This document shows, in pieces, positions 23,282 through 58,495 of a DNA stretch of 64,000 nucleotides; position 1 is the first letter of the stretch, and each line of letters starts with the position of its first letter. A program made the position numbers and the translations under genes. The stretch lies in assembly GCA_002269645.1 (NCBI GenBank), contig NIVC01003928.1, positions 1 to 64,000 of the forward strand, written 5' to 3'. The DNA is from Macrostomum lignano. Lineage: Eukaryota. The notes beneath the pieces are model-generated. The model did no database searches. It was not told where the DNA came from and was given only the letters and a program-made list of their open reading frames with translations.

Positions 23282-23342
<61 letters not shown>

Positions 23343-23955
23343 TGCACGAGGCACTTATTGGCCAAGTGTGCAAAAGCTTGCACATATTGGGACTGCTCCG
23401 ACACACGAAAAATCACACACACACACGTCCCCACACAGGCAATTTTCAACCCACCAAATCGATTTTTATTGACAACATGCTTTTGGCTTACTGAAAACAG
23501 TTGGAAAGCATTTTTCGAGGTGCATTGAACTCACAACAGATTGTACATGTATACTTGTCTAAAACAGAATTAAAAAACCCTGGTGTCTTGCTGAATTCCA
23601 CTTAAGGCAATAATATCAGCGCGTCAAATTTCACCGGATAATTTCAGCGATCATAGATTATAGAAGACAGGATGGTAAATGGCAAGGGACTTTAAGGTTA
23701 TCGAAAACAAACGACATTGACACATATCAAAAAAATTTTACGATCTGAATAAACAAAATTTGCTACATTTAGTGCCACTGGGAAAAAACAATTCTGTAGC
23801 GAAACTCCACTGTTCATAAAAATGTACTTTATTGATTATGACACAATCACTAGAATTACTCAAAAGGTACATGTCAGCTATTCGGACCCACAGAATGCTA
23901 CGAAAGGATGCGGAAATGAACCACACTATAGCAGAAGCCAGCACACACTATAGTA

Positions 23956-24212
23956 TAGGGCTGTCCCAACAATTCCAGCATAGCCAGTGTGGATAGGGCT
24001 GTCCCAACAAATCCAGCATAGCCAGTGTGGATAGGGCTGTCCCAACAATTCCAGCATAGCCAGTGTGGATAGGGCTGTCCCAACAATTCCAGCATAGCCA
24101 GTGTGGATAGGGCTGTCCCAACAATTCCAGCATAGCCAGTGTGGATAGGGCTGTCCCAACAATTCCACCATAGCCAGTGTGGATAGGGCTGTCCCAACAA
24201 TTCCAGCATAGC
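23956..24212. repeat. 38-bp minisatellite (~7 copies) containing GTCCCAACA
   Basis: Unit TAGGGCTGTCCCAACAATTCCAGCATAGCCAGTGTGGA, inside element A. Confidence 0.95.
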
Positions 24213-24410
24213 TTGAAAAAGAATATACACAAATACTATAAAAAGCAAATGCTAGAGCTCTACCGCGGTCATTGCACCGGATTTTAATAGAAACAGACTG
24301 CAAAAAATGCATCCTCTAAATAATATTCCAGTGAAGCACACAACAGTTAATCGGCTTCTCAATTCAGAAAATTAAAAAATATCCAGCTCCGCCAGAAAAC
24401 TCATGAATTA

Positions 24411-24431
24411 ACTGACTGCTGCACAGATAGC

Positions 24432-24482
<51 letters not shown>

Positions 24483-25091
24483 GGCTTGTGAGCAGCAAGT
24501 GAGCCAAATGACGGATGCAGCGGCGAGATCAGAATGCTCGCTGCTGATCGTTAAAGCGCATTCTTGTCTCTTAGGCATGTCGCTGGCGTGGCTGACTTCA
24601 GAATCTGCGAGGAAAAGAAATCAATTAAGATAGGCTTGCCTTAGTAATCGTTAATAGGCTATAAAGGAACCCTTTAATAGAACGTGTTCAACTAATGCTG
24701 GGTCTGTTTTGAAAAGTCAGAACTCAGAAGTAGTCGCGATTAGAATCAGTATTGTCCCAATAAGTGCGACCCAACAAATGCTGTTCAAAAAATAGGCCTG
24801 GCTGCAATGTCCCAATAAATGCCCAACAAATTACTAGCCTTGAGCTAGGCTGGGCTGTGTTTACTATTCATTGCGTTTGTAGCTTGTGTCCCAACAATGC
24901 CACTGAGATTGTTGCATTGCTTTTGAATTGTGCTCTACCAAGTAACACAAGTACTCTGGTGTACAATACTTCTACAGCAGATAATACTCACCCAAAACAG
25001 ATCGTCTCTTTCTCTTTAATCCTGTGCCGGACGGGTTTTCTTCAGATCGACCAGAAAATTCACAAATAGACTGACTGCCTGCACGGATAGC

Positions 25092-25139
<48 letters not shown>

Positions 25140-26460
25140 GGCTTGTGAGCAGCAAGTGAACCAAATGACGGATGCAGCGGCGAGATCAGAATGCTCGCTG
25201 CTGATCGTTAAAGCGCATTCTTGTCTCTTAGGCATGTCGCTGGCGTGGCTGACTTCAGAATCTGCGAGGAAAAGAAATCAATTAAGATAGGCTTGCCTTA
25301 GTAATCATTAATAGGCTATAAAGGAACCCTTTAATAGAAAGTGTTCAACTAATGCTGGGTCTGTTTTGAAAAGTCAGAACTCAGAAGTAGTCGCGATTAG
25401 AATCAGTATTGTCCCAATAAGTGCGACCCAACAAATGCTGTTCAAAAAATAGGCCTGGCTGCAATGTCCCAATAAATGCCCAACAAATTACTAGCCTTGA
25501 GCTAGGCTGGGCTGTGTTTACTATTCATTGCGTTTGTAGCTTGTGTCCCAACAATGCCACTGAGATTGTTGCATTGCTTTTGAATTGTGCTCTACCAAGT
25601 AACACAAGTACTCTGGTGTACAATACTTCTACAGCAGATAATACTCACCCAAAACAGATCGTCTCTTTCTCTTTAATCCTGTGCCGGACGGGTTTTCTTC
25701 AGATCGACCAGAAAATTCACAAATAGACTGACTGCCTGCACGGATAGCGGCTGCTGCTGCTGCTGCTGCTGCTGCTGCGGCTTGTGAGCAGCAAGTGAAC
25801 CAAATGACGGATGCAGCGGCGAGATCAGAATGCTCGCTGCTGATCGTTAAAGCGCATTCTTGTCTCTTAGGCATGTCGCTGGCGTGGCTGACTTCAGAAT
25901 CTGCGAGGAAAAGAAATCAATTAAGATAGGCTTGCCTTAGTAATCATTAATAGGCTATAAAGGAACCCTTTAATAGAAAGTGTTCAACTAATGCTGGGTC
26001 TGTTTTGAAAAGTCAGAACTCAGAAGTAGTCGCGATTAGAATCAGTATTGTCCCAATAAGTGCGACCCAACAAATGCTGTTCAAAAAATAGGCCTGGCTG
26101 CAATGTCCCAATAAATGCCCAACAAATTACTAGCCTTGAGCTAGGCTGGGCTGTGTTTACTATTCATTGCGTTTGTAGCTTGTGTCCCAACAATGCCACT
26201 GAGATTGTTGCATTGCTTTTGAATTGTGCTCTACCAAGTAACACAAGTACTCTGGTGTACAATACTTCTACAGCAGATAATACTCACCCAAAACAGATCG
26301 TCTCTTTCTCTTTAATCCTGTGCCGGACGGGTTTTCTTCAGATCCACCAGAAAATTCACAAATAGACTGACTGCCTGCACGGATAGCGGCTGCTGCTGCG
26401 GCTGCTGCTGCTGCGGCTTGTGAGCAGCAAGTGAAATAAATGACGGATGCAGCGGCGAGT
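24411..26460. repeat. ~640-657-bp tandem array (about 3.1 units) with variable (GCT)n tract
   Basis: Near-identical units (periods 657 and 639, seen from the repeated ORFs at 24764, 25421, 26060). GCT runs of 16, 15, 9 and an interrupted 3+4. Confidence 0.95.
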
Positions 26461-28939
26461 TTGAATGCGGACGAACCTGTGCGTGAGCGCACAAAAGAAA
26501 AATCACTTATTGAGAAATCTGTTTGATTTGTTTGAAAACAGATTTAAATGTCGCTGTTCTAATAAATGCTTCATTGTCAATGAAATTTTACTGTACAATT
26601 AAAATACTCGTAGTTTGTCCCAACGGTGCTGCTTGTGTCAGTTAGATGGAGTATGTACAAATTTCACTTTCTCGATAGTGCCGCAGCAACTTACTTTGCC
26701 CTTAGCTGACTGCAGGCAGGCTTGCTTGTTTTAATAATGCCCTAGAAAACAAAACACTTATTGCAATTAAGTTTCAGTTACTGGGAGTTGCAATTTTCTG
26801 AGATCCTATCTCTTTGCTGACCGCCCATCTTCCCAATCAGATGAGCTTCTTTTTTGTTGCTGACTCTGCCCTGCTTTTCTTTCGGCGTTTGCCTTTGCAG
26901 TAAGCTTTGTTTCTCGTTCTAGAATGCTGTCATTTTATACTGTTCTTTAGTTATGTAATAATACTGCTTTGAGTAGAAAAATAATTTGACTATCGAATTA
27001 TAACAGTAATATATTATATTAGTTGCCCAGCAAACTCACATGGTATTTCTCCAAGTCTCTAGTACTGTGGGCGATGTGTCATGCGAGATTTCTTTCCTAA
27101 ATGTTTTGATTGAAACTTTTAGTAAAATTTGTTCTTCCTAGAAGTGTAAATTTTGCCTACTTATGAGTGCTGTGTAGTGCTGTTGTAAATTAATTGATAA
27201 ATAAGGTGATCGTGCCGCCTCTCTTATATTTCACTGAGCTCAGAGTATTACTAGGCTGCTAATTATTTTTTTCAACGTACAAAAATACGACATATACGAG
27301 TACGAGACAAGACTTACTTGACAATGAAGGCAAATCTGTTTGTTATAGAAGAAAACGGTAGCTTATCGATATCAACGTATCTGGAATTTTAGAAAAGTAC
27401 ATATGTAAATTCCAGTTAAGTTTTTATTTAATCATAAAATTTTAAAAAGAATTTTAAATTCTACTTACATATGTGTAATGGTTCCTAGCCAAGTCTTTTC
27501 ATGCCAGGTCATGCATGGAAACTCTTGTGACGTGGCACATTTTGTCTGTGTAGTGCAGGTCTCGTAAATGAATTATATTCGTTTGAACATATGCAGTACC
27601 GCCAGTACGCCTTTTGTCAAAGGGAACTTCTACATGTACCTTTCCGTTAGAATTGGCTCTTCCTCTTGTAGGCCTCAACTTCAGTGTAAACTTTATCCCG
27701 ACTCCCTTGCGCCCGCCTCTCCTCCCCGCTTCCCCCCGCCGCGATAGGAATGTACGCGTGGCCTGGGTAAGGGATTGCCTGGGTCTTGTACACGCTTGTC
27801 CTAACACTTCTGCACTGTACGTGGGTTTATCTTTACGATCCAAGATAAGCAAAATTGTTTTCCAGGAAGGCCTAGTAGTTAGTTTTGGGCCAACTAGTCA
27901 TCGATTTCGACTTTACAGTGACAGTGACACTCAAACATGTGCTAGCAGTCCATGCAGTCATCTTAAGTTTCTTCGTATCTCAGTACATTTCAGTATACCA
28001 GACGATAATTATCATAATTCTAGGAAAAATTTTGCTACATAGTATAGCTGCCCAAACCCAGGCCAATAAGGAAGTCATTTAAAGCCTTAGAGATTAAACG
28101 TTTCCCTCTAATACTCGTCCTCGGTTTTCTCGGGAAATGCAAAGTTTTTCTTTGCCCTTTATTTCTTTGCTCTAAAAGCGCTTCATAAGACTGTGAGAAT
28201 TTCCACCGGAAAACTACCTCACTCAAAGTGTCACTTTACGTTAATGGCCTCCAGTCACTAACTTGAGTCAGTTAATACCCATTCACATATGACAAATAGA
28301 TTAATGCAGCTGACTGAAAACGAGAATTTCAGTTAAAATGGCCGAGGGCACAGGCGGATGTAACCTTAATTTGTTATGTTTCGTGTATAAGTGAAATTGG
28401 AAGCTAATGAATTTAGATGCTAGCTGTTTCTATGCAAAAATCTAAATATACTAAATCTATAAGGTTTGTATGCTTGATTGTAATATTCTAAATCCTTATT
28501 AAATTATTTCATATTTTATAGTAAACACGATGCCAAATGTCAGGATCCTTTCAAGTGTCGATTGGCAGCCCTGTGGAGAACCTCTATCTGTTACTTGTAG
28601 TAGACTTTCTTGATATTGTAAGAAATATTGTAATAAAACGAGAATACCGATTTGAGACCCAATTGTTCTGTTGGATCAGACCATCAGTTCGCATAATTTT
28701 TTAAACTTCTTAGGACACTGCAAATCATTAGATTCCCCGTGTTTGATTAAAAATATGAAAAAATGACATTGATTTTTGAAAGGAGAATCGAAAGACGGTT
28801 CCAATGAATATTTTTTCATTTCAATAGAATTCATTTTTGGAAGTGTCGGGACGCACTTATTGGGCCTGGCCCAACACATTTTTGGTCCTAATAGCACGGG
28901 TCAGTTTATACACGCTTGTCCCAAGAAATGCCTAATGCA

Positions 28940-28992
<53 letters not shown>

Positions 28993-29804
28993 TCAGTAAG
29001 AGGCCCGACAAGGCTAATTCGGCTAAAGAAAAGTAGGAAGGGCCGGCAGCCCCCCCCCTGGTCAGGTGACCAAGGGAAGCTAGTGAACAATGATGCACTT
29101 CTTTCGTTCATTTGCTAATGTACAAGGCCGCCTGCACAGCAATGCTAACTTCAACTGCATTAGGCGATTAACATTATTTTGCATGTAGTAAAGAGTCCTC
29201 AGACTCCTCTAAAGAGTCATAAGACTGCCGGCCACAAATATTGTGAAATTCAGAAGTATCTTAATAGCTTTTAGAGAAGAGTCAATTCTTTTTTAAATCA
29301 AGTTTAGATGTACAAAATAAGAGGCTGGCCGTATGTATGGTTTTATTACAATTAAACTATATATAATTTAATATGATTGCCATGTTTATATATATATATT
29401 TTAATTTAAAATATACTCAGCCGCAGGAGACAACTTAAGGTTGGTTTAATCAATGAGCGGAGCGGCATGCGATCAATAATATTTATAGATCAATCGAAAG
29501 AAAACGTGAGCAAACTACTCGTGCACTAAACACTAACTGGAAGCAATAAACGGTGACAAGAGCCGCTAAATGATCACATCCACATTGTCTATAGAGACTG
29601 AATTTACTGTGAACTATGCCTATTGTGCTGCTATGTTGGAAATAAAGTCTGCGTTCGCAATCAAAACGGGGTTTGCATTGTATAAAATCTTCAAGTATAA
29701 GGGTTAAAACACATCCTCCTCGAATACTAACAATGGGAGAAATGAATGATGACGAGCATAAGACTGATTGGTTAAAAGGCAAGTCTCAAGGCTTGAGTGC
29801 TGGG

Positions 29805-29965
29805 GTCGGGCAGATGAGGGTGCACTGAAGGGCTGGGACAGCTGAGGGCGCACTGAAGGGCTGGGACAGTTGAGGGTGCACTGAAGGGCTGGGACAGCTA
29901 AGGGTGCACTGAAGGGCTGGGTCAGCTGAGGGTGCACTGAAGGGCTGGGTCAGCTAAGGGTGCAC
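29805..29965. repeat. 28-bp repeat CAGCTGAGGGTGCACTGAAGGGCTGGGA
   Basis: Direct inspection. Confidence 0.9.
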
Positions 29966-30344
29966 TGAAGGGCTGGGGCAGCTGATGGCGCACTGAAGGG
30001 CTGGGACAGCTGAGGGTGCACTGAAGGATACAAGAATAAAAATCGTATAAAACTACTGAATAACAGATGAATAAATGTGAAGCCAGATTAGGAAACCAGC
30101 CCAGTCACAGTAACAAGTGTACATGCTGTTAATAATTAATGAGATTAAATATGCACACATGGATAAAAACGAGTACTGTTGACACCGAATCTGAGAATGA
30201 CGCTTGCCCGAGTCATCGTTAGAATATTGATGACAATTTAGAATTGTAATGAGCAAACATAAGCCAGGAAAATTCAAGAGATGCATGGCAGATCTACAGA
30301 ACTGAGAGAATAGAAAGTTTGTCAAAAAAAAACAAAAATTTGTT

Positions 30345-30625
30345 TCTAATCCAGATTCTACTATACACATCTTGCTAGTTTAGAAGTCTCGGGGCGCAGT
30401 TTCCAATCCAGATTCTACTATACACATCTTGCTAGTTTAGAAGTCTCGGGGCGCAGTTTCCAATCCAGATTCTACTATACACATCTTGCTAGTTTAGAAG
30501 TCTCGGGGGCGCAGTTTCCAATCCAGATTCTACTATACACATCTCGCTAGTTTAGAAGTCTCGGGGGCGCAGTTTCCAATCCAGATTCTACTATACACAT
30601 CTTGCTAGCTTAGAAGTCCCGGGCA
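30345..30625. repeat. 57-58-bp repeat (~5 copies) just 3' of the p85-like stop codon
   Basis: Unit TCCAATCCAGATTCTACTATACACATCTTGCTAGTTTAGAAGTCTCGGGGCGCAGTT. Confidence 0.93.
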
Positions 30626-30635
30626 GAAGCCGCGG

Positions 30636-33600
30636 TCAAACGTAGGTATTGTTAGTCCGCTCGGCGGCATTCATCTGGGCCAGCTGCTTCAGCGGCAGCA
30701 GTAGAAAGGTGTCCATGTCGCGGTTGTGCTTGCCCAGCGAGTTCACCCGGTAGTGCGCGACCAGCTCCTCCAGGCTGGGGAACGAGGTCGGACTGACGTA
30801 GTCGAAGCCGCACCGGCCGGTCTGCTGCTGGCCGGCGCCCAGCTCCATGAAGATCTTGCAGAAGCGGACACCGCACGGACTGCGGACGGACAGCACTAGG
30901 CTCTCCTCGCCACCTGAGCGAGACGCGTGAATCAGGAAGGTGCCGATTGGCGCATTGTCCAGATGGCGCAGCAGCGGGTCGGCCTTGGTGATCTGCCTGT
31001 CCAGCCAGTCGGCGGGGTCCCACGGCGCCGCGGAGGTCGAACCCACCGGGTCCTCGGCCAGCGACAGTCGCTCGAAGCTGTCGGCGCAGCCGGGGAAGTA
31101 GCCGCCGAGATTGGCGGCGTCCTCGGCGTCCACCGTCTCGCGCAGCACGCCGTACAGGGTCATCAGGATGGCCTTGAGGCGGATGCGCTTCTCCTGGATT
31201 GCGCGAACGTCTCCGCGCATCGTGCGCACCTCGGCCTGCATCACCTGGCTATCGTGCCGGATCCGCTGCGCCTCCTTCTCGGCCGCTTCCTGCCTGGACC
31301 GGTACATCTGCATGCGGCTCACCTGCGGAATGGGCGGCGGGGGTGGCTTTATGGGTTGCCAGCGGTATGCTGCTTGCGGGATCAGGTAGAAACAGGTGAG
31401 GAGAAGGGAGCATAGGGAGAATCCAGATGGGAGCATAGGGAGAATCCAGATGGGATCATAGGGAGAATCCAGATGGGAGCATAGGGAGAATCCAGATGGG
31501 GATCGAGGGAACCCATATGGGGATCAGGGGAGAATCAATATGGGGATTAAGGGAAAATTCCGAGAATACCGATACTCACGATTCCACTCCAATAAACTTA
31601 TCACTCACCTGCGAGTCCCGATTGGTCTTCATGAGCTGTTCCAGAGCACTGCGCCGCTCAATGAGTCTGTCCATCTTGGCGATATTGTTGGTAAGGGTGA
31701 GCACGACCTGCGAGTAGCACTTAGCGCCGCGCTCCGCCTCCAGCTGCTGATCCTTTAGCGTTCCCATAGTAACAATGTTCTCGTCCATCTTTGTAAACAC
31801 GTCGGAGATTTCGCGACCCATTTCTTGGTAGAGGGTCAGCAGCTCCTGCCTCATCTGGGCGGGAAAACCAATTCGAGATGGGATCAATACGACTCATACG
31901 AGCCTCATGCGCCCCATCACTCGATTCTTCCCATCTCCACAATCTTCCCCCTTTCCGTCACTCCAATTCTTCCCCTTTCTCGTCACTCCAATTCTACCCC
32001 TTTCTCGTCATTCCAATTCTTCCCATTCCCGTTACTTCAATTCTTCCTCTTTCCTGTCACCCCCAATTCTTCTCCTTTCTCGTCACTCCAATTCTTCCCC
32101 ATTCTCAAAAAAATAATCTTCCCCCTTTCTCGTCACTCCCAATTCTTCCTCTTTATCGTCACTCCCATTTTTCCCCTTTCTCGACCCTCCAATTCTTCCC
32201 CTTTCCTGTCACTCAAATTCTTCCCTTTTCTCGTCACCCCAATGCTTCCTCTTTCTCGTCACCCCAATTCTTCCCCATTCTCGTCACTCCTAATTCTTCC
32301 CCTTTCTCGTCACCACAATTCTTCCCCTTTCCTGTCACTCAAATTCTTCCCTTTTCTCGTCACCTTAATTCTTCCCCTTTCTCGTAAATCGAATTCTCCC
32401 CTTTCCTGTCACTCAAATTCTTCCCCCTTTCTCGTCCCTACCAAATCTCTCTTTTCTCGTCACTCTAATTTTTCCCCTTTCTCTTAAATGCAATTCTTCC
32501 GCATTCTCTGACTCTAATTCTTCCCCACACCCTGCAACCCAAATTCCTCCCCTACGAGTGAACAGCAAAACACAGATCCCCAGCTCACTTCTTCGCTGTT
32601 CCCCTTGGAGGCAGATTCAGCTGGGCAGCCTGCAAACTTGCTAATGGGATAGAGGAGCAACACGTCCAGGTTGTTATTGTACTCGCGCAGCGAATTGTAG
32701 GTGTAGTGATTGATGACCTGGGCTACCGTGTAGAACTCGGTGGCCCGCTCGGAGAAGCCGTACGTGACCCGGTCGCCGGTCTTGTAGCGCGGATAGATTC
32801 TAATCAGCTTGTTCTCGCCGTCCTTCTTCAGAGTCAGCGTGTAGCCGCCGCTCATGTTGGCGGCGTTGCGCACTAGGAATGAGCCGTCCGGCCGGTTGGC
32901 CAGCACGGCTTGAACCTCCGACTTGGAGATGTCGCCCCAGTACCACGGTTGCTCGGGCAGGGAGATGTGATCCACCTGCGGGATGGCGCAGCGGTTGCTT
33001 TTAGTTGTCAAGCCGGTTTCACTTATGAGCTAGTTGCTAGGCAGTTCTGGGGATTGGATATAATTGGGGTTGGGGTTTGAGATCGGGAATCGGGATAGTG
33101 ATGGGATTTGAGATTGGAAATCAGGACACTGATGGGATTTGAGATTGGGAATCGGGACAGCGATGGGATTTGAGATTGGGAATCGGGACAGTGATGGGAT
33201 TTGAGATTGGGAATCGGGACAGTGATGGGATTTGAGATTGAGAATGTGGATGGGATTTGAGATTGGGAATCTGGATGGGATTTGAGATTGGGAATCATGA
33301 TGGGATTTGAGATTGGGAATCATGATGGGATTTGAGATTGGGAATCTGGACAGTGATGGGATTTGAGATTGAGAATCGGGATGGGATTTGAGATTGGGAA
33401 TCGGGATGGGATTTAAGATTGAGAATCTGGATGGGATTTGAGATTGGGAATCAGGATGGCATTTGAGATTGGAAATCGGGATGGGATTTGAGATTGAGAA
33501 TCTGGATGGGATTTGAGATTGGGAATCATGATGGGATTTGAGATTGGGAATCTGGATGGGATTTGAGATTGGGAATCATGATGGGATTTGAGATTGGGAA

Positions 33601-46760: not shown

Positions 46761-47223
46761 TCCCACCTCAATCTACAACAATGCAAACGTCAAATCAATA
46801 ATCGCGGCGCACACCCAGTCCCTCCACTTCCTTCCCTCTGTACAATATAATACAACAGGCCCCCAAATGGCGCACGAACCAATCTGCCATCAAATTTTAG
46901 TCAAGCTGCAGGTGCGGTCCCGTGCAGACACACTGAGCCAATCTCTTTCCACCTGTCAGGCCACTCCCCAATTGCGGAAGACGCTTCCCAAACGGCCCGC
47001 CAAGCAATATTAGGCTGGAGGTACACAAGAGCCACGGATATATGCGCGCACACGTCTGACTCTTGCGGCTTCCGGACTTGAGACGCCATCGCTGCTGCAG
47101 AGTCTGAAGTATTTGCCAAATTCAGTTTTCATCATCCTGGAGTGCTTCTATCCATCGTGTAAGCAACGTCCTTAATAATTGCAGTGGCTGAGCAGTAGGA
47201 AGATGAGAACAGTACTGCAGCGT

Positions 47224-47985: not shown

Positions 47986-48487
47986 CTGTCTCTTAAGCGC
48001 CATTGCACCAAAAAGCCATCAGCTTGAATAGAATCAGTTCAACCGAATTCATTATGAGCTCTGCAAAAGCAGAAAAGCTGCTGGTTGGCAATTTCTATCT
48101 GAAGGCCTTTTCCGCATGGCTAATTGAGATTGCCATTGGAAATGATTTATGCTATTCGGATATATTTAGCAAAAATATTGCAGAGCTAGTTTAAAATCAA
48201 TGATGAGCCTGGATTGCTTGCCTTTTCATTGCAGATAAAATTGATGATATTTTTAATGAAAGCGGCTCTGGGAAGAGAGATTAGAGAGAGATCAATATAC
48301 TGGCATGTATTGCACAGTATGAAAAAGTAAAATGATTGCTAGTCTAACCAATTGGTGGATAATTTATCATTAGATGCCGTCAAGTATGACGTCATTTTCA
48401 TAGGCAATCAAATGAGATATGCGCTGCAAAACTCATATGGGTCTTTGGTGGGGTTGGCGTCACCACAAAGATTGCACATGCCTGGCG

Positions 48488-49459: not shown

Positions 49460-50813
49460 AACGCTTTTCATGCTACTTATAAAGCATAAGTAGTGTGTAA
49501 GGAGTTTTTTGATACTTAAATTTAACGAAGAAATGCATATAAACCTAAACCTAAACATGCGTACATATGTGAAATATTAAAATAAGCTTTATTTAATATG
49601 TATTATAATTACTAATTAATAATCACCAATTACTGTAAGAAAAAAATCTTTGGCAATATATTTCCCAGACGTACCTCAAATTGTGTATTTTTAATTATCA
49701 TGTATTTTTAATTGTACATAAAAATGAACTTTTAAGTCTTTAAATATTTGTTTTTTTAAACTCGAGAGAAGATTCGTTTTATTCGTATTGAACTTATTTC
49801 AAAAGGCATTTCTTCATAGATTTCATAGAAAACTTGTTTACATCTTTTTTTCATCAGTCCATTATGAAACGTTGTATTTTTTCGATGACAGCTCAAGTGA
49901 GCACACTGCACCCAATAACTATCTCCAGCCATTTCTGGGGGCCTCGCAACTGTTCGAGGCATTCTTTCTCGGATTAAACAGGATTAGAAGTTACAAGCTA
50001 TTCAAGAGACCACAGCTGGGCTCGCGGGGCCACTCAACCGAGACGGGGCCATCAAAAGTGGCTTTGTGAGGCTGGGCTGCACTGCTGCATTGGTCTGGCG
50101 ACTTTTGTGTCTGTATTATGCAAAATTTCTATTCAATATGACAGTTGAGCTGGCTGCTCCGCCATTGGCCCGGCAGGGCTGGGCTGGCACAGAATATGAG
50201 AAGGTGGGAGCGCCGGCGTCTCAGCCCAGCGGGGGGTTTAAATTCAAGCAAGGCGCCCCAAAGCTCATTAGCGGCCAACTTGCAGCAAAGCATTCGATAG
50301 ACAGAGAGGCTCTTTCCCTCTCGTACCCAGTTGAAGTGCCGCGCGCTTTACTCGTAATTGACTCAACAGAGCTGCTCAGCTTAATCCCTTGACAACCTAC
50401 TTCACACTCTGGTACAGCCTGGGCCCCATTCGGTACTGCCGGAACTCCAGCAAGCGTTGGCTTAACCAGCTCAGAAGGATAAGAAGAAACAACGAAGGGA
50501 TCCAACAGCTTTACGAAGGCAGGTAGGAAACTTCCGGTTCTGTGCACCCCGAGTCCTTTCCGAAGTATTCTCTCTCGAAGACATTCCAAATCTGCATCAG
50601 GCGGCTGGCCGGTTTCGCAATGGCAGCCTCAAACTGGCCAATTCTCATTTTCCCAGCTCTCAATGGAGCGGCCAAACAACACGCACAGGTAGAGGCAGTG
50701 AGTAAATGAGAGGCGCTGGAATTTCTGCCAGGCAGCCGCCCCACCCCAAGTTTGCCAACTGAGTCCGCACTGTTTGTTTGGCCTGCTTGCCAAATGGAAG
50801 AAGTTGAAGAGGC

Positions 50814-50846
<33 letters not shown>

Positions 50847-53800
50847 ACGCACCGGGCACTTGTTGGTACGGTATACAATGGTGGGCACTTATTTTGCAAT
50901 TTTTTTTGACACACGAAAACACGCACATACACACAGTGCAATGACCTATTAAGTATTTTTAGCATTTAAATGATGAAAAAAAGCATACATTGAAATAAAA
51001 AAGCACGTCCCATACTAATAGTATGATCTATTGAAAGTGAAGGAATAGCATATCATCGTGTAACTATATTGTCCTCAGTCGAGCGAATTCAGCATTACTT
51101 GAAATACAAGTCTTCGTTGAAGCCAATCCACATGAAGGAAAAACTAGTTACAAGCAGTCTATTTACCTTTACCTTTACTAATACGCTATAATGCTGTACG
51201 CAATATGCCTGACTAATATGAATAAAAAATTCAATTACACTTGCGCTTAGGAAAAAACCTAAAATTGACAGTGAAACTGAAAAACTGAAACGCAAAGATT
51301 AGTTAAGCAGATTAAACAAAAAATTCCGGTCGAGCGAGAAAACAGGAGTCTCGTTATTTAGAGCACTCTGGCATCCAGCATTACGCTTGCAGATTATAAA
51401 TTAGCTGCTCTCCTGAGTTCGAAGCTGACAGGTCCGTTGCAGTCGGCATCGATTGAGTCGACTGCCAATTTAGTCAATGGGTTTCGTTTCTTCTTTTCAC
51501 TGGAACCTGTGGTGGGATTAGCAAAAGATCGATTTCGCATATCTGTTTAGTGATTTCAAGGACGACAAAATCATTCTTCTCTGCATGTCAGCTCCAGAAG
51601 ATGCTAGTTTGCTTGCAGCTTTCTGTAGGAGCATTCTACTTTAGTAAAGTGTACCCATTCTAAAATAAGCTGTTTTTAATATGTCCCAACAAGTCTCTGT
51701 GCAGTGTGTCATCCGTTTGCCCATCAATTTGTTCTGGAGCCCTTTATTAATTGAGTTCTTTAGGTGACTTAACAAATGCGGAAAAAACTAGACACACACA
51801 CACAGTGGCCCAACACTTCGTGTCCCAATAATTGCTAGGAAAAATGCACTGCAGTGTTTAAGCATCTCCTCTGAGGGGCCCTTGCATGCATAGCTATAGA
51901 ATCTGCTAAGACCCGATCTGAGAGTTAAAAGTACAAAAAGTTATAACGCTTCTAGACACGAAAACGAATGCAGCCACAGCATGAACTAACCTTTTATTGA
52001 AGCTTCTGCTTTAAATACTTTGATGCTGTGAAGCATTCTGGCATCTAGCATTACTCTCGTAGACTATTAGCTGCTCTCCTGAGTTCGAAGCTGACAGGTC
52101 CGTTGCAGTCGGCATCGATTGAGTCGACTGCCAATTTAGTCAATGGGTTTCGTTTCTTCTTTTCACTGGAACCTGTGGTGGGATTAGCAAAAGATCGATT
52201 TCGCATATCTGTTTAGTGATTTCAAGGACGACAAAATCATTCTTCTCTGCATGTCAGCTCCAGAAGATGCTAGTTTGCTTGCAGCTTTCTGTAGGAGCAT
52301 TCTACTTTAGTAAAGTGTACCCATTCTAAAATAAGCTGTTTTTAATATGTCCCAACAAGTCTCTGTGCAGTGTGTCATCCGTTTGCCCATCAATTTGTTC
52401 TGGAGCCCTTTATTAATTGAGTTCTTTAGGTGACTTAACAAATGCGGAAAAAACTAGACACACACACACAGTGGCCCAACACTTCGTGTCCCAATAATTG
52501 CTAGGAAAAATGCACTGCAGTGTTTAAGCATCTCCTCTGAGGGGCCCTTGCATGCATAGCTATAGAATCTGCTAAGACCCGATCTGAGAGTTAAAAGTAC
52601 AAAAAGTTATAACGCTTCTAGACACGAAAACGAATGCAGCCACAGCATGAACTAACCTTTTATTGAAGCTTCTGCTTTAAATACTTTGATGCTGTGAAGC
52701 ATTCTGGCATCTAGCATTACTCTCGTAGACTATTAGCTGCTCTCCTGAGTTCGAAGCTGACAGGTCCGTTGCAGTCGGCATCGATTGAGTCGACTGCCAA
52801 TTTAGTCAATGGGTTTCGTTTCTTCTTTTCACTGGAACCTGTGGTGGGATTAGCAAAAGATCGATTTCGCATATCTGTTTAGTGATTTCAAGGACGACAA
52901 AATCATTCTTCTCTGCATGTCAGCTCCAGAAGATGCTAGTTTGCTTGCAGCTTTCTGTAGGAGCATTCTACTTTAGTAAAGTGTACCCATTCTAAAATAA
53001 GCTGTTTTTAATATGTCCCAACAAGTCTCTGTGCAGTGTGTCATCCGTTTGCCCATCAATTTGTTCTGGAGCCCTTTATTAATTGAGTTCTTTAGGTGAC
53101 TTAACAAATGCGGAAAAAACTAGACACACACACACAGTGGCCCAACACTTCGTGTCCCAATAATTGCTAGGAAAAATGCACTGCAGTGTTTAAGCATCTC
53201 CTCTGAGGGGCCCTTGCATGCATAGCTATAGAATCTGCTAAGACCCGATCTGAGAGTTAAAAGTACAAAAAGTTATAACGCTTCTAGACACGAAAACGAA
53301 TGCAGCCACAGCATGAACTAACCTTTTATTGAAGCTTCTGCTTTAAATACTTTGATGCTGTGAAGCATTCTGGCATCTAGCATTACTCTCGTAGACTATT
53401 AGCTGCTCTCCTGAGTTCGAAGCTGACAGGTCCGTTGCAGTCGGCATCGATTGAGTCGACTGCCAATTTAGTCAATGGGTTTCGTTTCTTCTTTTCACTG
53501 GAACCTGTGGTGGGATTAGCAAAAGATCGATTTCGCATATCTGTTTAGTGATTTCAAGGACGACAAAATCATTCTTCTCTGCATGTCAGCTCCAGAAGAT
53601 GCTAGTTTGCTTGCAGCTTTCTGTAGGAGCATTCTACTTTAGTAAAGTGTACCCATTCTAAAATAAGCTGTTTTTAATATGTCCCAACAAGTCTCTGTGC
53701 AGTGTGTCATCCGTTTGCCCATCAATTTGTTCTGGAGCCCTTTATTAATTGAGTTCTTTAGGTGACTTAACAAATGCGGAAAAAACTAGACACACACACA

Positions 53801-56800
53801 CAGTGGCCCAACACTTCGTGTCCCAATAATTGCTAGGAAAAATGCACTGCAGTGTTTAAGCATCTCCTCTGAGGGGCCCTTGCATGCATAGCTATAGAAT
53901 CTGCTAAGACCCGATCTGAGAGTTAAAAGTACAAAAAGTTATAACGCTTCTAGACACGAAAACGAATGCAGCCACAGCATGAACTAACCTTTTATTGAAG
54001 CTTCTGCTTTAAAGACTTTGATGCTGTGAAGCATTCTGGCATCTAGCATTACTCTCGTAGACTATTAGCTGCTCTCCTGAGTTCGAAGCTGACAGGTCCG
54101 TTGCAGTCGGCATCGATTGAGTCGACTGCCAATTTAGTCAATGGGTTTCGTTTCTTCTTTTCACTGGAACCTGTGGTGGGATTAGCAAAAGATCGATTTC
54201 GCATATCTGTTTAGTGATTTCAAGGACGACAAAATCATTCTTCTCTGCATGTCAGCTCCAGAAGATGCTAGTTTGCTTGCAGCTTTCTGTAGGAGCATTC
54301 TACTTTAGTAAAGTGTACCCATTCTAAAATAAGCTGTTTTTAATATGTCCCAACAAGTCTCTGTGCAGTGTGTCATCCGTTTGCCCATCAATTTGTTCTG
54401 GAGCCCTTTATTAATTGAGTTCTTTAGGTGACTTAACAAATGCGGAAAAAACTAGACACACACACACAGTGGCCCAACACTTCGTGTCCCAATAATTGCT
54501 AGGAAAAATGCACTGCAGTGTTTAAGCATCTCCTCTGAGGGGCCCTTGCATGCATAGCTATAGAATCTGCTAAGACCCGATCTGAGAGTTAAAAGTACAA
54601 AAAGTTATAACGCTTCTAGACACGAAAACGAATGCAGCCACAGCATGAACTAACCTTTTATTGAAGCTTCTGCTTTAAATACTTTGATGCTGTGAAGCAT
54701 TCTGGCATCTAGCATTACTCTCGTAGACTATTAGCTGCTCTCCTGAGTTCGAAGCTGACAGGTCCGTTGCAGTCGGCATCGATTGAGTCGACTGCCAATT
54801 TAGTCAATGGGTTTCGTTTCTTCTTTTCACTGGAACCTGTGGTGGGATTAGCAAAAGATCGATTTCGCATATCTGTTTAGTGATTTCAAGGACGACAAAA
54901 TCATTCTTCTCTGCATGTCAGCTCCAGAAGATGCTAGTTTGCTTGCAGCTTTCTGTAGGAGCATTCTACTTTAGTAAAGTGTACCCATTCTAAAATAAGC
55001 TGTTTTTAATATGTCCCAACAAGTCTCTGTGCAGTGTGTCATCCGTTTGCCCATCAATTTGTTCTGGAGCCCTTTATTAATTGAGTTCTTTAGGTGACTT
55101 AACAAATGCGGAAAAAACTAGACACACACACACACAGTGGCCCAACACTTCGTGTCCCAATAATTGCTAGGAAAAATGCACTGCAGTGTTTAAGCATCTC
55201 CTCTGAGGGGCCCTTGCATGCATAGCTATAGAATCTGCTAAGACCCGATCTGAGAGTTAAAAGTACAAAAAGTTATAACGCTTCTAGACACGAAAACGAA
55301 TGCAGCCACAGCATGAACTAACCTTTTATTGAAGCTTCTGCTTTAAAGACTTTGATGCTGTGAAGCATTCTGGCATCTAGCATTACTCTCGTAGACTATT
55401 AGCTGCTCTCCTGAGTTCGAAGCTGACAGGTCCGTTGCAGTCGGCATCGATTGAGTCGACTGCCAATTTAGTCAATGGGTTTCGTTTCTTCTTTTCACTG
55501 GAACCTGTGGTGGGATTAGCAAAAGATCGATTTCGCATATCTGTTTAGTGATTTCAAGGACGACAAAATCATTCTTCTCTGCATGTCAGCTCCAGAAGAT
55601 GCTAGTTTGCTTGCAGCTTTCTGTAGGAGCATTCTACTTTAGTAAAGTGTACCATTCTAAAATAAGCTGTTTTTAATATGTCCCAACAAGTCTCTGTGCA
55701 GTGTGTCATCCGTTTGCCCATCAATTTGTTCTGGAGCCCTTTATTAATTGAGTTCTTTAGGTGACTTAACAAATGCGGAAAAAACTAGACACACACACAC
55801 AGTGGCCCAACACTTCGTGTCCCAATAATTGCTAGGAAAAATGCACTGCAGTGTTTAAGCATCTCCTCTGAGGGGCCCTTGCATGCATAGCTATAGAATC
55901 TGCTAAGACCCGATCTGAGAGTTAAAAGTACAAAAAGTTATAACGCTTCTAGACACGAAAACGAATGCAGCCACAGCATGAACTAACCTTTTATTGAAGC
56001 TTCTGCTTTAAAGACTTTGATGCTGTGAAGCATTCTGGCATCTAGCATTACTCTCGTAGACTATTAGCTGCTCTCCTGAGTTCGAAGCTGACAGGTCCGT
56101 TGCAGTCGGCATCGATTGAGTCGACTGCCAATTTAGTCAATGGGTTTCGTTTCTTCTTTTCACTGGAACCTGTGGTGGGATTAGCAAAAGATCGATTTCG
56201 CATATCTGTTTAGTGATTTCAAGGACGACAAAATCATTCTTCTCTGCATGTCAGCTCCAGAAGATGCTAGTTTGCTTGCAGCTTTCTGTAGGAGCATTCT
56301 ACTTTAGTAAAGTGTACCATTCTAAAATAAGCTGTTTTTAATATGTCCCAACAAGTCTCTGTGCAGTGTGTCATCCGTTTGCCCATCAATTTGTTCTGGA
56401 GCCCTTTATTAATTGAGTTCTTTAGGTGACTTAACAAATGCGGAAAAAACTAGACACACACACACAGTGGCCCAACACTTCGTGTCCCAATAATTGCTAG
56501 GAAAAATGCACTGCAGTGTTTAAGCATCTCCTCTGAGGGGCCCTTGCATGCATAGCTATAGAATCTGCTAAGACCCGATCTGAGAGTTAAAAGTACAAAA
56601 AGTTATAACGCTTCTAGACACGAAAACGAATGCAGCCACAGCATGAACTAACCTTTTATTGAAGCTTCTGCTTTAAATACTTTGATGCTGTGAAGCATTC
56701 TGGCATCTAGCATTACTCTCGTAGACTATTAGCTGCTCTCCTGAGTTCGAAGCTGACAGGTCCGTTGCAGTCGGCATCGATTGAGTCGACTGCCAATTTA

Positions 56801-58460
56801 GTCAATGGGTTTCGTTTCTTCTTTTCACTGGAACCTGTGGTGGGATTAGCAAAAGATCGATTTCGCATATCTGTTTAGTGATTTCAAGGACGACAAAATC
56901 ATTCTTCTCTGCATGTCAGCTCCAGAAGATGCTAGTTTGCTTGCAGCTTTCTGTAGGAGCATTCTACTTTAGTAAAGTGTACCCATTCTAAAATAAGCTG
57001 TTTTTAATATGTCCCAACAAGTCTCTGTGCAGTGTGTCATCCGTTTGCCCATCAATTTGTTCTGGAGCCCTTTATTAATTGAGTTCTTTAGGTGACTTAA
57101 CAAATGCGGAAAAAACTAGACACACACACACAGTGGCCCAACACTTCGTGTCCCAATAATTGCTAGGAAAAATGCACTGCAGTGTTTAAGCATCTCCTCT
57201 GAGGGGCCCTTGCATGCATAGCTATAGAATCTGCTAAGACCCGATCTGAGAGTTAAAAGTACAAAACTTATAATTTTTGTGGTTGGACACGTAGGCTATT
57301 GAGTGTCAATGGATTCAGACGAAATGTCAAGTTTTACTCAAAGCTTTTACAGCTTACTGGTTAAAGTCGACGGATCCTTTGGCAATTGCGCCACATGGCA
57401 GTTGATCAAAGGTGATATACCTGAAGTAAAGGTAGGTACTGCTTAGCAGGAGCAGTATTTTTATAGCATTTAAATATAAATGCTTCTTGTTTCCGACAAA
57501 GTTTTTTAATACCACTTACATGTTTCTCGCTGTGCCATTCCATGCTGTTCTTTCCATACCATGGTGACTCGGGTGCCATGGCAGAGGCAGAGTTGACCAT
57601 TGATTTCAGCATAGCGAGTACATGCCAATTTAGTTTTACCGTACGTTTGCGGGGTGGCGTCAATAATAGACCAAAATAAAAGTACACTTAACTAGCAAGG
57701 GGACTCTGGTAAATTGGAGCCATGTACACAGGGGGTAGGGCTTAGTCCTAACATGTACGGGGTAAGTCCTAATATGAGTGGGCTTTTGTAAACGACACTC
57801 TAGCACACAGCCCCAACAATTTATAGAATATCGAATGCGCGCAGCAGTCAATAGCATGAGTCCTAACAAGAGTGGGCTGTTGTATTCAACACTGCAACAC
57901 TGTCCTAACAATTTAGTTCGTGTAGAGTACTGATGCCCATCACAGTCAGAAGTACATGTAAGCCCTTGTCATTTCTTTAGGTTTATCTCCATCCAGAACC
58001 ATCCTTTGACAATAAAATACCCTTAAAAGTGTTTTGCTATGCTTTGCTTTGTATGTATTTTAATGTATGCTATGTATTTACGTCTTGTAACAAAGACTGC
58101 AGCAAATGAATGCGCTTGAAATCTACTATTAGTAAAAATATGAGAAAAAACCAATAAAAATATGCGGGAGCAGATTAGCCATTTCAGTGTCCCAATAGTG
58201 ATTTGGTCGAATTTTGTATCATTTTTCCTTATTGGGACGCCAGTTTTTGCTTAATTATGGACTCAGAAAGTAAAATTATTAAAAATGAGTTGCACCATCA
58301 AAAAGAGGCTGTCGAGCTGAATCCATAGAGTATTTTTTTGAGCTGCTATTGTAAGTTTTTTGGAAGTGTTGGACGGACTTGATGGGACAGTCCCAACATT
58401 TTTTTTGGCCCAACAGTGCGGGTCCCGTTGTACGCGTATGGCCCAACAAATGCCCCGTGC

Positions 58461-58462
<2 letters not shown>
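50847..58462 (-). mobile_element. TIR DNA transposon-like element B (~7.6 kb) inserted in (CA)n, with internal ~666-bp array
   Basis: Left end ACGCACCGGGCACTTGTTGG; right end (reverse complement) GCGCACGGGGCATTTGTTGG. (CA)n on both sides (50815-50843, 58465-58492). The last ~105 bp align with those of element A. Confidence 0.75.
51362..57268. repeat. ~666-bp tandem array, ~8.9 near-identical copies
   Basis: Anchor GAGTTCGAAGCTGACAGG at 51415, 52081, 52747, 53413, 54079, 54745, 55413, 56078, 56743. Confidence 0.97.

Positions 58463-58495
<33 letters not shown>

What the first reader, a model, noticed from the sequence alone, without database searches (positions are those of the whole stretch)
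23342..58462. A family of large TIR transposon-like elements sitting inside (CA)n microsatellites (two related copies: 23342-28940 and 50847-58462)
Seen: four long (CA)n tracts in the window (23283-23338, 28943-28991, 50815-50843, 58465-58492) form two pairs. Each pair brackets a segment whose ends are inverted repeats (consensus RYGCAYNRGGCAYTTNTTGG). The base step outside the ends is AAAC/AAAC in A and AATC/AAAC in B. The right ends align over ~105 bp (TTTTTGGAAGTGTCGGGACGCACTTATTGGGCCTGGCCCAACA vs TTTTTGGAAGTGTTGGACGGACTTGATGGGACAGTCCCAACA), and both left ends carry GACACACGAAAA. Inference: two diverged members of one DNA-transposon family, in the same orientation, that target CA microsatellites with a possible 4-bp TSD. 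Microsatellite targeting is known for some non-LTR elements and a few DNA elements. I cannot assign these termini to a superfamily, so this may be an undescribed family.
Basis: partly seen in the sequence, partly recalled or inferred. Interest (0 to 1): 0.85.

Follow-up and report, generated by a model that had tools for sequence, protein, structure and literature searches.

The report
CA-microsatellite-targeting inverted-repeat transposons in a flatworm
Two related non-coding mobile DNA elements in the flatworm Macrostomum lignano sit inside (CA)n microsatellites, and nine more copies elsewhere in the genome do the same, always in the same orientation, which makes this a strictly microsatellite-targeting DNA transposon family of a kind I could not find described in animals.

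Summary
The window is Macrostomum lignano contig NIVC01003928.1. It has only four long (CA)n tracts, and all four abut the four ends of two elements: A (23342-28940) and B (50847-58462). The elements share a 20-bp terminal inverted repeat and about 100 bp at each end. Neither has coding capacity. Their interiors are unrelated tandem arrays.

Homologous contigs of the same assembly carry empty sites at both positions, each with one uninterrupted (CA)n. So both elements are insertions into pre-existing microsatellites.

An annotated 60-aa gene inside B's repeat unit gave access to nine further independent B-type copies. Every visible end is flanked by (CA)n, on both sides wherever both ends are in the fetched DNA. 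All lie in the same orientation relative to the CA strand (11 of 11 with A). All have the same junctions: (CA)n-ATC-[element]-AAA-(CA)n.

The proposed 4-bp duplication (AAAC) is therefore refuted. Those bases are absent from the empty sites, unequal, and constant between loci, so they belong to the element.

The superfamily and the enzyme remain unknown, because no autonomous copy was reachable. Closest analogues are the plant (TA)n-targeting Mutator-like elements and cnidarian CryptonV. I rate it a new variant of a known kind, recently active.

The parts
23283..23338 (+). Left flanking microsatellite of element A, (CA)28
   Evidence: The orthologous empty site in NIVC01000275.1 has one (CA)31.
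23339..23341 (+). Junction triplet AAC at the left end of A. It is element-borne, not a target duplication.
   Evidence: Absent from the empty sites. The analogous ATC is constant in all ten B-type sites.
23342..23361 (+). Left terminal inverted repeat of A: GTGCACGAGGCACTTATTGG
   Evidence: It matches the right repeat at 16 of 20 positions.
23362..23440 (+). Left subterminal region of A, shared with B. It holds a second GCAYWTNTTGGG motif (23380-23391), GACACACGAAAA (23400-23411) and an internal (CA)6 (23414-23425).
23955..24212 (.). 38-bp tandem array (6.8 copies) inside A
24392..26468 (.). Tandem array of about 657-bp units (about 3.2 copies) inside A. Each unit has a (GCT)n tract and three CCCAAYAANTGC motifs.
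26469..28833 (.). Non-repeated, non-coding interior of A
   Evidence: No long ORF and no Pfam match.
28834..28920 (+). Right subterminal region of A, conserved with B. It includes the inverted motif pair TTGGGCC-T-GGCCCAA.
   Evidence: The BLAST match between A and B covers 99 bp at 74.7% and runs on into the right repeat.
28921..28940 (-). Right terminal inverted repeat of A. Reverse complement: GTGCATTAGGCATTTCTTGG.
28941..28943 (+). Junction triplet AAA at the right end of A (element-borne)
   Evidence: Absent from the empty sites. The same AAA is present in every B-type copy.
28944..28991 (+). Right flanking microsatellite of A, (CA)24
50816..50843 (+). Left flanking microsatellite of element B, (CA)14
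   Evidence: The empty sites have (CA)24 (L004) and (CA)23 (L005).
50844..50846 (+). Junction triplet ATC at the left end of B (element-borne)
   Evidence: Identical at all ten independent B-type sites.
50847..50866 (+). Left terminal inverted repeat of B: ACGCACCGGGCACTTGTTGG
   Evidence: It matches the right repeat at 17 of 20 positions.
50867..50940 (+). Left subterminal region of B: a second motif copy, GACACACGAAAA (50908-50919), and a degenerate CA run
51362..57273 (.). Tandem array of about 666-bp units (about 8.9 copies) inside B. Each unit has an (AC)6 run and CCCAAYAA motifs. One unit carries an annotated spliced 60-aa gene (53383-54049, minus strand).
58357..58442 (+). Right subterminal region of B, conserved with A
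58443..58462 (-). Right terminal inverted repeat of B. Reverse complement: GCGCACGGGGCATTTGTTGG.
58463..58465 (+). Junction triplet AAA at the right end of B (element-borne)
58466..58493 (+). Right flanking microsatellite of B, (CA)14

Best explanation
A and B are non-autonomous members of one family of terminal-inverted-repeat DNA transposons of Macrostomum lignano. They keep only the cis-acting parts. These are a 20-bp terminal repeat (RYGCAY NN GGCAYTTNTTGG), distinct left and right subterminal regions of about 100 bp that hold further copies of the GCAYTTNTTGGG motif, and three extra non-inverted bases at each tip (AWC on the left, AAA on the right). The interiors are unrelated cargo that has expanded into satellite-like tandem arrays.

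An enzyme supplied in trans, not yet identified, recognises the ends and integrates the element into pre-existing (CA)n microsatellites. Integration is always in register with the CA repeat and always in the same orientation relative to the CA strand. It leaves pure CA on both sides and no duplication distinguishable from the repeat itself.

Shown here: family relationship; lack of coding capacity; insertion into pre-existing CA tracts; constant junctions; constant orientation; recent activity.

Inferred: the enzyme is most likely a cut-and-paste DDE transposase with a sequence-reading target-selection function. At the B site the occupied allele has 8-10 bp more CA than the empty ones, which would fit an 8-10-bp duplication hidden in the repeat.
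For: Family:
- Four exact matches to the terminal consensus, against 0.37 expected.
- The ends of A and B align while the interiors do not.
- A left/right difference at repeat position 13 (C on the left, T on the right) is the same in A and B.

Non-autonomous:
- No long ORFs and no Pfam hits.
- No Rfam or tRNA hits.

Insertion into pre-existing CA tracts:
- The window is NIVC01003928.1.
- At A's site, contig NIVC01000275.1 has one uninterrupted (CA)31. Its flanks are identical to the window over about 1.3 kb apart from one 1-bp indel.
- At A's site, the more diverged contig NIVC01000280.1 has (CA)10 plus decayed repeat.
- At B's site the two contigs have (CA)24 and (CA)23.

Family-wide specificity:
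- Nine further independent B-type copies were fetched through an internal annotated gene, so selection was blind to the flanks.
- All are CA-flanked, on both sides wherever both ends were visible.
- All have junctions (CA)n-ATC...AAA-(CA)m and unrelated outer flanks.
- All 11 insertions have the same orientation relative to the CA strand. The probability of that by chance is about 0.001.

Recent activity:
- Terminal regions of five B-type copies are 99.1-99.8% identical.
- A is present or absent between contigs with near-identical flanks.

Motif repeats typical of transposase-binding sites: 26 matches to GCAYWTNTTGGG against 5.4 expected, and all but one lie inside A or B.

Precedent: microsatellite-targeting inverted-repeat elements with longer CA-equivalent flanks at occupied than at empty sites are documented for plant Mutator-like elements (PMC4486113; PMC5907723).
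Against: - No transposase or any autonomous copy was found, so the enzyme class is pure inference.
- The outermost three bases of the two ends are not inverted complements (AWC against AAA). That is unusual for DDE elements, whose cleavage-site bases are normally the best-conserved part of the inverted repeat.
- Strict orientation specificity towards an asymmetric target is also unusual for DDE cut-and-paste elements. It is intrinsic to recombinase, rolling-circle or homology-driven insertion.
- At A's site the two flanking tracts total 52 units against 31 in the empty allele. No short duplication explains that.
- All data come from one assembly of one inbred line.
Confidence: 0.7

Rival explanations
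1. The elements move by site-specific recombination, by a tyrosine or serine recombinase as in Cryptons. A circular form carries the two inverted ends as recombinase-binding arms around a short crossover core. That core recombines with a CA-repeat pseudo-site.
For: - No target duplication is visible.
- The junctions are constant and in register with the repeat, and orientation is strict in 11 of 11 insertions.
- Cryptons have 4-6-bp direct repeats at both termini that are taken as recombination substrates (PMC3212892). A has AAAC at both ends.
- CryptonV families of cnidarians are reported to insert specifically in microsatellites (PMC8869645, citing a Repbase Report I could not read).
Against: - Cryptons are described as lacking terminal inverted repeats. 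These elements have 20-bp ones plus multiple subterminal motif copies.
- The 4-bp direct repeat is unequal (AATC against AAAC) in all ten B-type copies.
- (CA)n is not palindromic, so it is a poor symmetric recombinase site.
- No recombinase gene was seen.
Confidence: 0.12
2. Insertion is by homology rather than by a target-reading enzyme. The excised element circularises with a (CA)x tract between its ends, and the circle recombines with any genomic (CA)y tract. Loss happens by recombination between the two flanking tracts. This is the model proposed speculatively for the plant SaTar elements.
For: It accounts for several features at once:
- Insertion in register with the repeat.
- Strict orientation.
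- Constant junction triplets.
- CA on both sides of every copy.
- Flank sums that exceed the empty allele: 52 against 31 at A, and 28 against 23-24 at B.
- Footprint-free empty sites.

The model is discussed in PMC5907723. The lengths of left and right tracts show only a weak correlation (rho 0.59, p 0.09, n=9).
Against: - Pure homology would need no conserved inverted ends. Yet A and B share nothing except their ends, so a protein must recognise them.
- Any DNA lying between two CA tracts would be mobile under this model.
- No circular junction was observed.
- A hybrid is possible, with a transposase doing the excision and homology doing the insertion. That overlaps with the best explanation.
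Confidence: 0.1
3. They are non-autonomous rolling-circle elements related to Helentrons (HINE or DINE-1-like), which insert strand-specifically without a target duplication.
For: HINEs share several traits (PMC4067079):
- Inverted repeats set 2-4 nt in from the 5' tip.
- Strings of T at the boundaries that belong to the element.
- No target duplication.
- Tandem repeats that can fill about half of the element.

Here the repeats sit 3 nt from the tips. On the minus strand the 5' tip reads TTT. Tandem arrays make up about 42% of A and 78% of B.
Against: - In HINEs the 3' inverted repeat lies 38-60 bp from the 3' tip with a palindrome after it, and the target is TT or T-rich. Here both repeats are 3 nt from the tips and the target is CA/TG.
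- No end folds better than shuffled sequence (z from -0.7 to +1.3).
- The canonical Helitron ends, 5'-TC and CTRR-3', are absent.
Confidence: 0.05
4. The CA tracts are not targets. They are part of the element, or are generated by it, and the 'empty' sites are remnants left after loss of the element.
For: - Every copy has CA on both sides.
- Recombination between the flanking direct repeats could leave a clean single tract.
Against: - This would need ancient insertions at both sites followed by at least three or four independent clean losses in the two other contigs. The alternative is two insertions.
- B-type copies are 99.1-99.8% alike. The three homologous flanks at B's site differ by about 1%, so the insertion looks younger than the split.
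- Unoccupied CA tracts exist elsewhere, at L013 3653-3702 and L014 12043-12058.
- Tract lengths differ freely between copies.
Confidence: 0.02

Closest known systems
Plant microsatellite-targeting Mutator-like elements: Micron/rSaTar2 (rice), MuTAnT (Medicago), SaTar (guayule), TAFT (maize), Ac-mMITE (pineapple)
   Same: - Inverted-repeat, mostly non-autonomous DNA elements flanked by a dinucleotide microsatellite on both sides.
- Empty sites carry a single tract.
- Occupied sites often carry more repeats than empty ones. MuTAnT-63, for example, has 24 and 22 repeats against 11 at the empty site.
- No target duplication can be read in the repeat.
- Sources: PMC4486113, PMC5907723, PMC8449440.
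   Different: - Those are plant elements, target mainly (TA)n, and are tied to mudrA-like transposases by repeat similarity. They also show 9-10-bp duplications at non-microsatellite sites.
- Because TA is palindromic, no orientation rule can be seen for them.
- Here the host is a flatworm and the target is (CA)n, with strict orientation.
- The inverted repeats are only 20 bp, the elements are 5-12 kb with satellite arrays, and no link to any transposase is known.
CryptonV (tyrosine-recombinase transposons of cnidarians)
   Same: - Animal DNA transposons reported to insert specifically in microsatellites (PMC8869645).
- Short direct repeats at the termini instead of a true duplication (PMC3212892).
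   Different: - Cryptons lack terminal inverted repeats and encode a tyrosine recombinase.
- These elements have clear inverted repeats, and no recombinase was seen.
- The primary report, a Repbase Report, could not be read.
(TG)n-specific non-LTR retrotransposons (Togen families of fish, NeSL-related) and other microsatellite-specific non-LTR elements
   Same: Same target repeat (CA/TG) and sequence-specific, orientation-specific insertion (PMC4640811).
   Different: Those are retrotransposons with reverse transcriptase and a restriction-like endonuclease, and they have no inverted repeats. Here there are inverted repeats, intact ends at both sides of every copy, no reverse-transcriptase remnant and no 3' tail.
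Dada (target-specific DDE transposons)
   Same: A DDE superfamily showing that cut-and-paste elements can insert at one defined site and orientation in a multicopy target (PMC3706591).
   Different: Dada targets small RNA genes and makes 6-7-bp duplications. Here the target is a microsatellite and no duplication is readable.
Endogenous nimaviruses of sesarmid crabs with a Ginger2-like transposase
   Same: Inverted-terminal-repeat elements (46-bp repeats) that integrate into a dinucleotide microsatellite by a DDE enzyme in an animal (PMC10871703).
   Different: Those are giant viral genomes that target (AT/TA)n and encode their own transposase.
Helentron-associated elements (HINE, DINE-1)
   Same: Non-coding elements with inverted repeats set a few bases in from the tip, boundary bases that belong to the element, no duplication, and large internal tandem arrays (PMC4067079).
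   Different: The architecture of the 3' end and the TT target do not match. See the membership test.

Membership tests
Microsatellite-targeting Mutator-like elements (Micron/MuTAnT/SaTar type) | Element flanked on both sides by a dinucleotide microsatellite, with a single tract at empty sites | tested here: met
   Met at 11 independent insertions, on both sides wherever both ends were visible. Empty sites were found for two of them.
Microsatellite-targeting Mutator-like elements (Micron/MuTAnT/SaTar type) | Inverted repeats similar to those of an autonomous element that encodes a mudrA-like transposase | not testable with these tools
   No autonomous copy was reachable. The whole M. lignano genome cannot be searched by DNA here, and the elements contain no transposase remnant.
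Microsatellite-targeting Mutator-like elements (Micron/MuTAnT/SaTar type) | A 9-10-bp duplication in copies that lie outside microsatellites | not testable with these tools
   None of the 11 insertions lies outside a CA tract. The only hint is that B's occupied site has 8-10 bp more CA than the empty sites.
Microsatellite-targeting Mutator-like elements (Micron/MuTAnT/SaTar type) | Long inverted repeats, about 100 bp or more (144 bp in MuTAnT) | tested here: not met
   The left and right ends are inverted copies over only 20 bp. Beyond that the left and right subterminal regions differ from each other.
Crypton (CryptonV) | Short (4-6 bp) direct repeats at both termini | tested here: inconclusive
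   A has AAAC at both ends. All ten B-type copies have the unequal pair AATC and AAAC.
Crypton (CryptonV) | No terminal inverted repeats | tested here: not met
   20-bp inverted repeats, matching at 16 of 20 and 17 of 20 positions.
Crypton (CryptonV) | Encodes a tyrosine recombinase | not testable with these tools
   Only non-coding copies were seen.
Helitron / Helentron (HINE) | Helitron: 5'-TC and CTRR-3' ends, inserted between A and T. HINE: TT or T-rich target. | tested here: not met
   The ends read AWC-RYGCAC...GYGCRY-AAA, and the target is CA/TG.
Helitron / Helentron (HINE) | A palindrome or hairpin near the 3' end, with the 3' inverted repeat 38-60 bp from the tip | tested here: not met
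   Both repeats are 3 nt from the tips. The terminal 132 nt fold no better than shuffles.
Helitron / Helentron (HINE) | Inverted repeat 2-4 nt in from the 5' tip, no duplication, and internal tandem repeats | tested here: met
Microsatellite-specific non-LTR retrotransposons | Reverse transcriptase and endonuclease ORFs or their remnants, 5' truncation, a 3' tail, and no inverted repeats | tested here: not met
   There is no such ORF. Inverted repeats are present, and both ends are intact in all copies where they are visible.
Dada | 6-7-bp duplication and insertion inside tRNA or snRNA genes | tested here: not met
   The targets are CA microsatellites, and the window has no tRNA or Rfam hit.
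MITE (miniature inverted-repeat element) | Small size (a few hundred bp), non-coding, inverted repeats, many copies | tested here: not met
   The elements are non-coding with inverted repeats, but they are 4.9-12 kb long because of the internal arrays.

The most novel reading that the evidence does not exclude
The family may use a mechanism that is not classical DDE cut-and-paste. It could be a recombinase-driven or homology-guided integration that reads the CA strand. That would explain the strict orientation, the in-register junctions, the element-borne non-inverted tips and the absence of a duplication. It would define a new superfamily or a new mode of microsatellite-directed transposition in animals.
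Probability: 0.25. Interest if true: 0.85.

Novelty: new variant of a known kind. Interest (0 to 1): 0.68.

Why it matters
Strict target-sequence specificity is rare among DNA transposons (PMC3706591, PMC8869645). The known microsatellite-targeting inverted-repeat elements hit palindromic (TA)n, where insertion orientation carries no information.

Here the target is the asymmetric (CA)n, and 11 of 11 insertions share one orientation and one register. This shows that the repeat sequence or strand itself is read, not merely an unusual DNA structure. That constrains the still-debated mechanism of microsatellite targeting, which could be transposase specificity or homology with a circular intermediate.

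The family looks recently active in M. lignano, a regeneration model with working transgenesis. An autonomous partner, if found, could be a source of a site-directed integration tool.

The elements also show how mobile inverted ends can spread 660-bp satellite arrays to many loci, and why CA microsatellite markers in this species may carry large insertions.

Tried and rejected
1. Coding capacity. ORF lists, stop-to-stop fragments and Pfam scans of both elements found nothing. There are no Rfam or tRNA hits.

2. Finding more copies by protein search. The ORF across A's right end has no homologue. An exact look-up of A's 101-aa repeat ORF is not on record.

3. Metagenome scan for repeat-plus-flank: 0 hits.

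4. A paralogous headcase locus (L006) has no copy and no CA tract.

5. The 657-bp and 666-bp units of A and B are not homologous. The local alignment score is 27, against 22 +/- 2.7 for shuffles.

6. Terminal hairpins: none is significant.

7. A 4-bp duplication AAAC: rejected, because it is absent from the empty sites and constant and unequal across loci.

8. Duplication of the whole tract on insertion. I considered this because the flanks are 14|14 and 28|24. I rejected it because the interruptions in L011's and L018's right tracts are not mirrored on the left, and because B's flanks sum to only 4-5 units more than the empty alleles.

9. The sequence AACAGACAGACACGAGAGGC at the empty site in L003, read as an excision footprint because it resembles CACGAGGC of A's repeat. 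It is more simply a decayed CA repeat (CA AA CA GA CA GA CA CG AG AG).

The cluster look-up worked instead.

11. Literature searches for a described CA-targeting inverted-repeat element in Macrostomum or other animals found none.

12. A resemblance between the GGCA core of the repeat and THAP-type binding sites is only a recollection. I did not test it and did not use it.

Full report
**Identity of the window.** The ORF at 20849-21934 (minus strand) is a headcase homologue, 99% identical to Macrostomum lignano PAA86546.1. The locus fetched for its cluster mate PAA49265.1 is contig NIVC01003928.1 of assembly GCA_002269645.1. It is 100% identical to the window over the 10.4 kb compared (window 20600-31000). 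Neighbouring genes are:
- a chimaerin-like gene with SH2, C1 and RhoGAP domains;
- a gene whose product UniRef names a MADF-domain protein, which starts about 440 bp to the right of element B;
- a malate/lactate dehydrogenase.

Both elements are intergenic.

**Check of the observation.**
- The four pure CA runs are 28, 24, 14 and 14 units long. They are the only CA runs of 8 or more units in the window.
- The terminal consensus occurs exactly four times with no mismatch, against 0.37 expected. Each occurrence lies three bases from a CA run.
- A (5,599 bp) and B (7,616 bp) resemble each other only at their ends. The left and right repeats match at 16 of 20 positions within A and at 17 of 20 within B. 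The right ends align over 99 bp at 74.7% identity. The left ends share a second motif copy, GACACACGAAAA, and a short CA-rich stretch.
- At repeat position 13 the left ends of both elements have C and the right ends have T. The two ends are therefore functionally distinct, and this distinction is conserved.

**Interior of the elements.** Neither element has an ORF of note or any Pfam, Rfam or tRNA match.
- A holds a 38-bp array, about 3.2 units of 657 bp with (GCT)n tracts, and 2.4 kb of unique non-coding DNA.
- B is 78% tandem array, about 8.9 units of 666 bp.
- The two kinds of unit are unrelated. Both contain copies of the terminal motif CCCAAYAANTGC, which gives 26 matches in the window against 5.4 expected. 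All but one of those matches lie inside A or B.

**Empty sites.** The assembly holds two further copies of this chromosomal region, on NIVC01000275.1 and NIVC01000280.1.
- At A's position, contig 275 reads GGAGTACGC-(CA)31-TTCAGTAAGAGG with nothing else. Its flanks are identical to the window over about 1.3 kb apart from one 1-bp indel.
- At A's position, contig 280 is 2-3% diverged. It has (CA)10 followed by decayed repeat.
- At B's position the two contigs read GAGGCAA-(CA)24-CTGTGGG and GAGGCAA-(CA)23-GTGGG.

Both elements are therefore insertions into microsatellites that were already there. A is a presence/absence difference between two contigs with near-identical flanks, so it is either a very recent insertion or a very recent clean loss.

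**More copies.** The NCBI annotation places a spliced 60-aa gene inside one of B's units. I reconstructed its product. It belongs to a cluster of M. lignano proteins with locus tags BOX15_Mlig001640g1 to g42. The loci that encode them gave nine further independent B-type insertions, plus one homologous duplicate (L011 and L012). Because they were chosen through an internal sequence, the sample is blind to the flanks.
- The flanking unique DNA is unrelated between loci.
- Every visible end abuts a CA tract of 5 to 36 pure units, on both sides in the nine sites where both ends lie inside the fetched DNA.
- All copies lie in the same orientation relative to the CA strand.
- All have identical junctions: (CA)n-ATC-ACGCACCGGGCACTT.TTGG ... 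CCAACAAATGCCCCGTGCGC-AAA-(CA)m.
- With A, this makes 11 of 11 insertions in one orientation (chance about 0.001).
- Lengths run from 4.9 to 12 kb. This is mainly because the number of 666-bp units varies. One copy carries a nested 1.7-kb insertion.
- Five copies are 99.1-99.8% identical in their terminal regions. Four others form a second subfamily at 95.7-98.1%.
- Unoccupied CA tracts also exist.

**The proposed 4-bp duplication.** The bases next to the inverted repeats are AAC or ATC on the left and AAA on the right. Read together with one base of the CA run they give AAAC/AAAC and AATC/AAAC. They cannot be a duplication of target sequence, for two reasons. The four empty sites contain only uninterrupted CA at that place. 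The ten B-type sites all carry the same unequal pair. These bases therefore belong to the element, whose real tips are 5'-AWC-RYGCAY... and ...RTGCRY-AAA-3'.

Any true duplication would consist of CA units and cannot be read.
- At B the occupied allele has 28 units against 23-24 in the empty ones, which would fit 8-10 bp.
- At A the figures are 52 against 31, so extra repeat gain must have occurred.
- Plant MuTAnT and TAFT insertions show the same excess.
- Duplication of the entire tract is unlikely, because interruptions in the right tracts of L011 and L018 are not mirrored on the left.

**Mechanism.** Two elements with unrelated interiors have kept the same ends, so a protein must recognise those ends. 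The repeated subterminal motif looks like the binding-site arrays of cut-and-paste transposons.

My best reading is therefore a non-autonomous inverted-repeat family mobilised in trans, most likely by a DDE transposase coupled to a function that reads the CA repeat.

Three features are atypical for such enzymes: the non-inverted tips, the strict orientation and the in-register junctions. They keep three rivals alive:
- a Crypton-like site-specific recombinase;
- a circular intermediate that enters by homology through a CA filler, which is the SaTar model and also explains the excess flank length;
- less likely, a Helentron-like rolling-circle element.

None of these can be decided without an autonomous copy or a circular junction. 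The tools gave no DNA-level access to the whole genome.

**Comparison with known systems.**
- Microsatellite-targeting inverted-repeat elements are known in plants (Micron, MuTAnT, SaTar, TAFT, Ac-mMITE). All are Mutator-like and target (TA)n.
- In animals, the papers I could search report microsatellite specificity for non-LTR retrotransposons, including (TG)n-specific Togen. They also report it for cnidarian CryptonV and for crab endogenous nimaviruses with a Ginger2-like transposase in (TA)n.
- I found no description of a (CA)n-specific inverted-repeat element, nor of this family in Macrostomum. Repbase and Dfam could not be checked.

I therefore rate it a new variant of a known kind.

Noticed in passing
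window 53383-54049 (minus strand); L009-L018: Each 666-bp unit of B can encode a spliced 60-aa 'hypothetical protein' with a GT-AG intron of 484 nt. NCBI annotates it as a multi-copy family, BOX15_Mlig001640 g1 to g42. It is probably an annotation of transcribed satellite rather than a real gene. The numbering suggests dozens of B-type arrays in the genome.
   Followed up: partly
L013 14024-15747 (positions 134-1857 of that B-type copy): A 1.7-kb insertion with TG...CA ends and a 5-bp duplication (GAAAA) interrupts the left subterminal region of one B-type copy. It looks like a solo LTR or other nested element.
   Followed up: partly
L013 3637-3835: About 100 bp from the occupied tract there is an unoccupied (CA)25 in the opposite orientation. 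The 104 bp between them has inverted ends (CGCACCCAGGCGTAT / ATACGCCTGAGGGTGCG). The structure is therefore (CA)n-[small palindromic unit]-(TG)n, possibly a different CA-associated repeat.
   Followed up: no
L013 and L016, about 110 bp of unique flank next to the left CA tract: The outer flanks of two independent insertion sites are about 80% alike (...TTCAGTCCAAGGAA...GGGTCGC-(CA)n). Some target microsatellites therefore belong to another dispersed repeat that ends in a CA tract.
   Followed up: partly
window 22683-29700 compared with 50200-59200, against contigs NIVC01000275.1 and NIVC01000280.1: At A's site the window and contig 275 have near-identical flanks, while contig 280 differs by 2-3%. 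At B's site, 27 kb away, the three copies are about equally distant (about 1%). This suggests recombination or gene conversion between the copies, or a mosaic assembly.
   Followed up: no
L003 8470-8524: The homologous microsatellite at A's site in contig 280 is short and decayed: (CA)10 AA CA GA CA GA CA CG AG AG. It contains a natural CAAAC, which shows that such interruptions arise on their own.
   Followed up: partly
whole window, e.g. 14572-15924, 33131-34643, 47222-47992: The window is extraordinarily rich in minisatellites. TRF returned 64 rows, some overlapping, with periods of 12-58 bp and up to 64 copies. Many lie in introns and create long spurious ORFs in all frames.
   Followed up: no
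window 38000-46000; ORF 42715-43674 (minus strand): This is an AT-rich island (GC 0.29-0.44, against about 0.5 elsewhere) holding an intronless 319-aa ORF with a Methyltransf_22/FkbM-type domain (Pfam E = 1e-13).
   Followed up: partly
window 23354, 28928, 50859, 58450: Position 13 of the terminal repeat is C at both left ends and T at both right ends, in A-type and in all B-type copies. It is a conserved mark that distinguishes the left end from the right.
   Followed up: partly
window 23414-23425, 50919-50935, and one (AC)6-7 per 666-bp unit of B: All the short CA runs inside the elements are on the same strand as the flanking (CA)n. I do not know whether they play a part in targeting or are relics of earlier insertions.
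   Followed up: no
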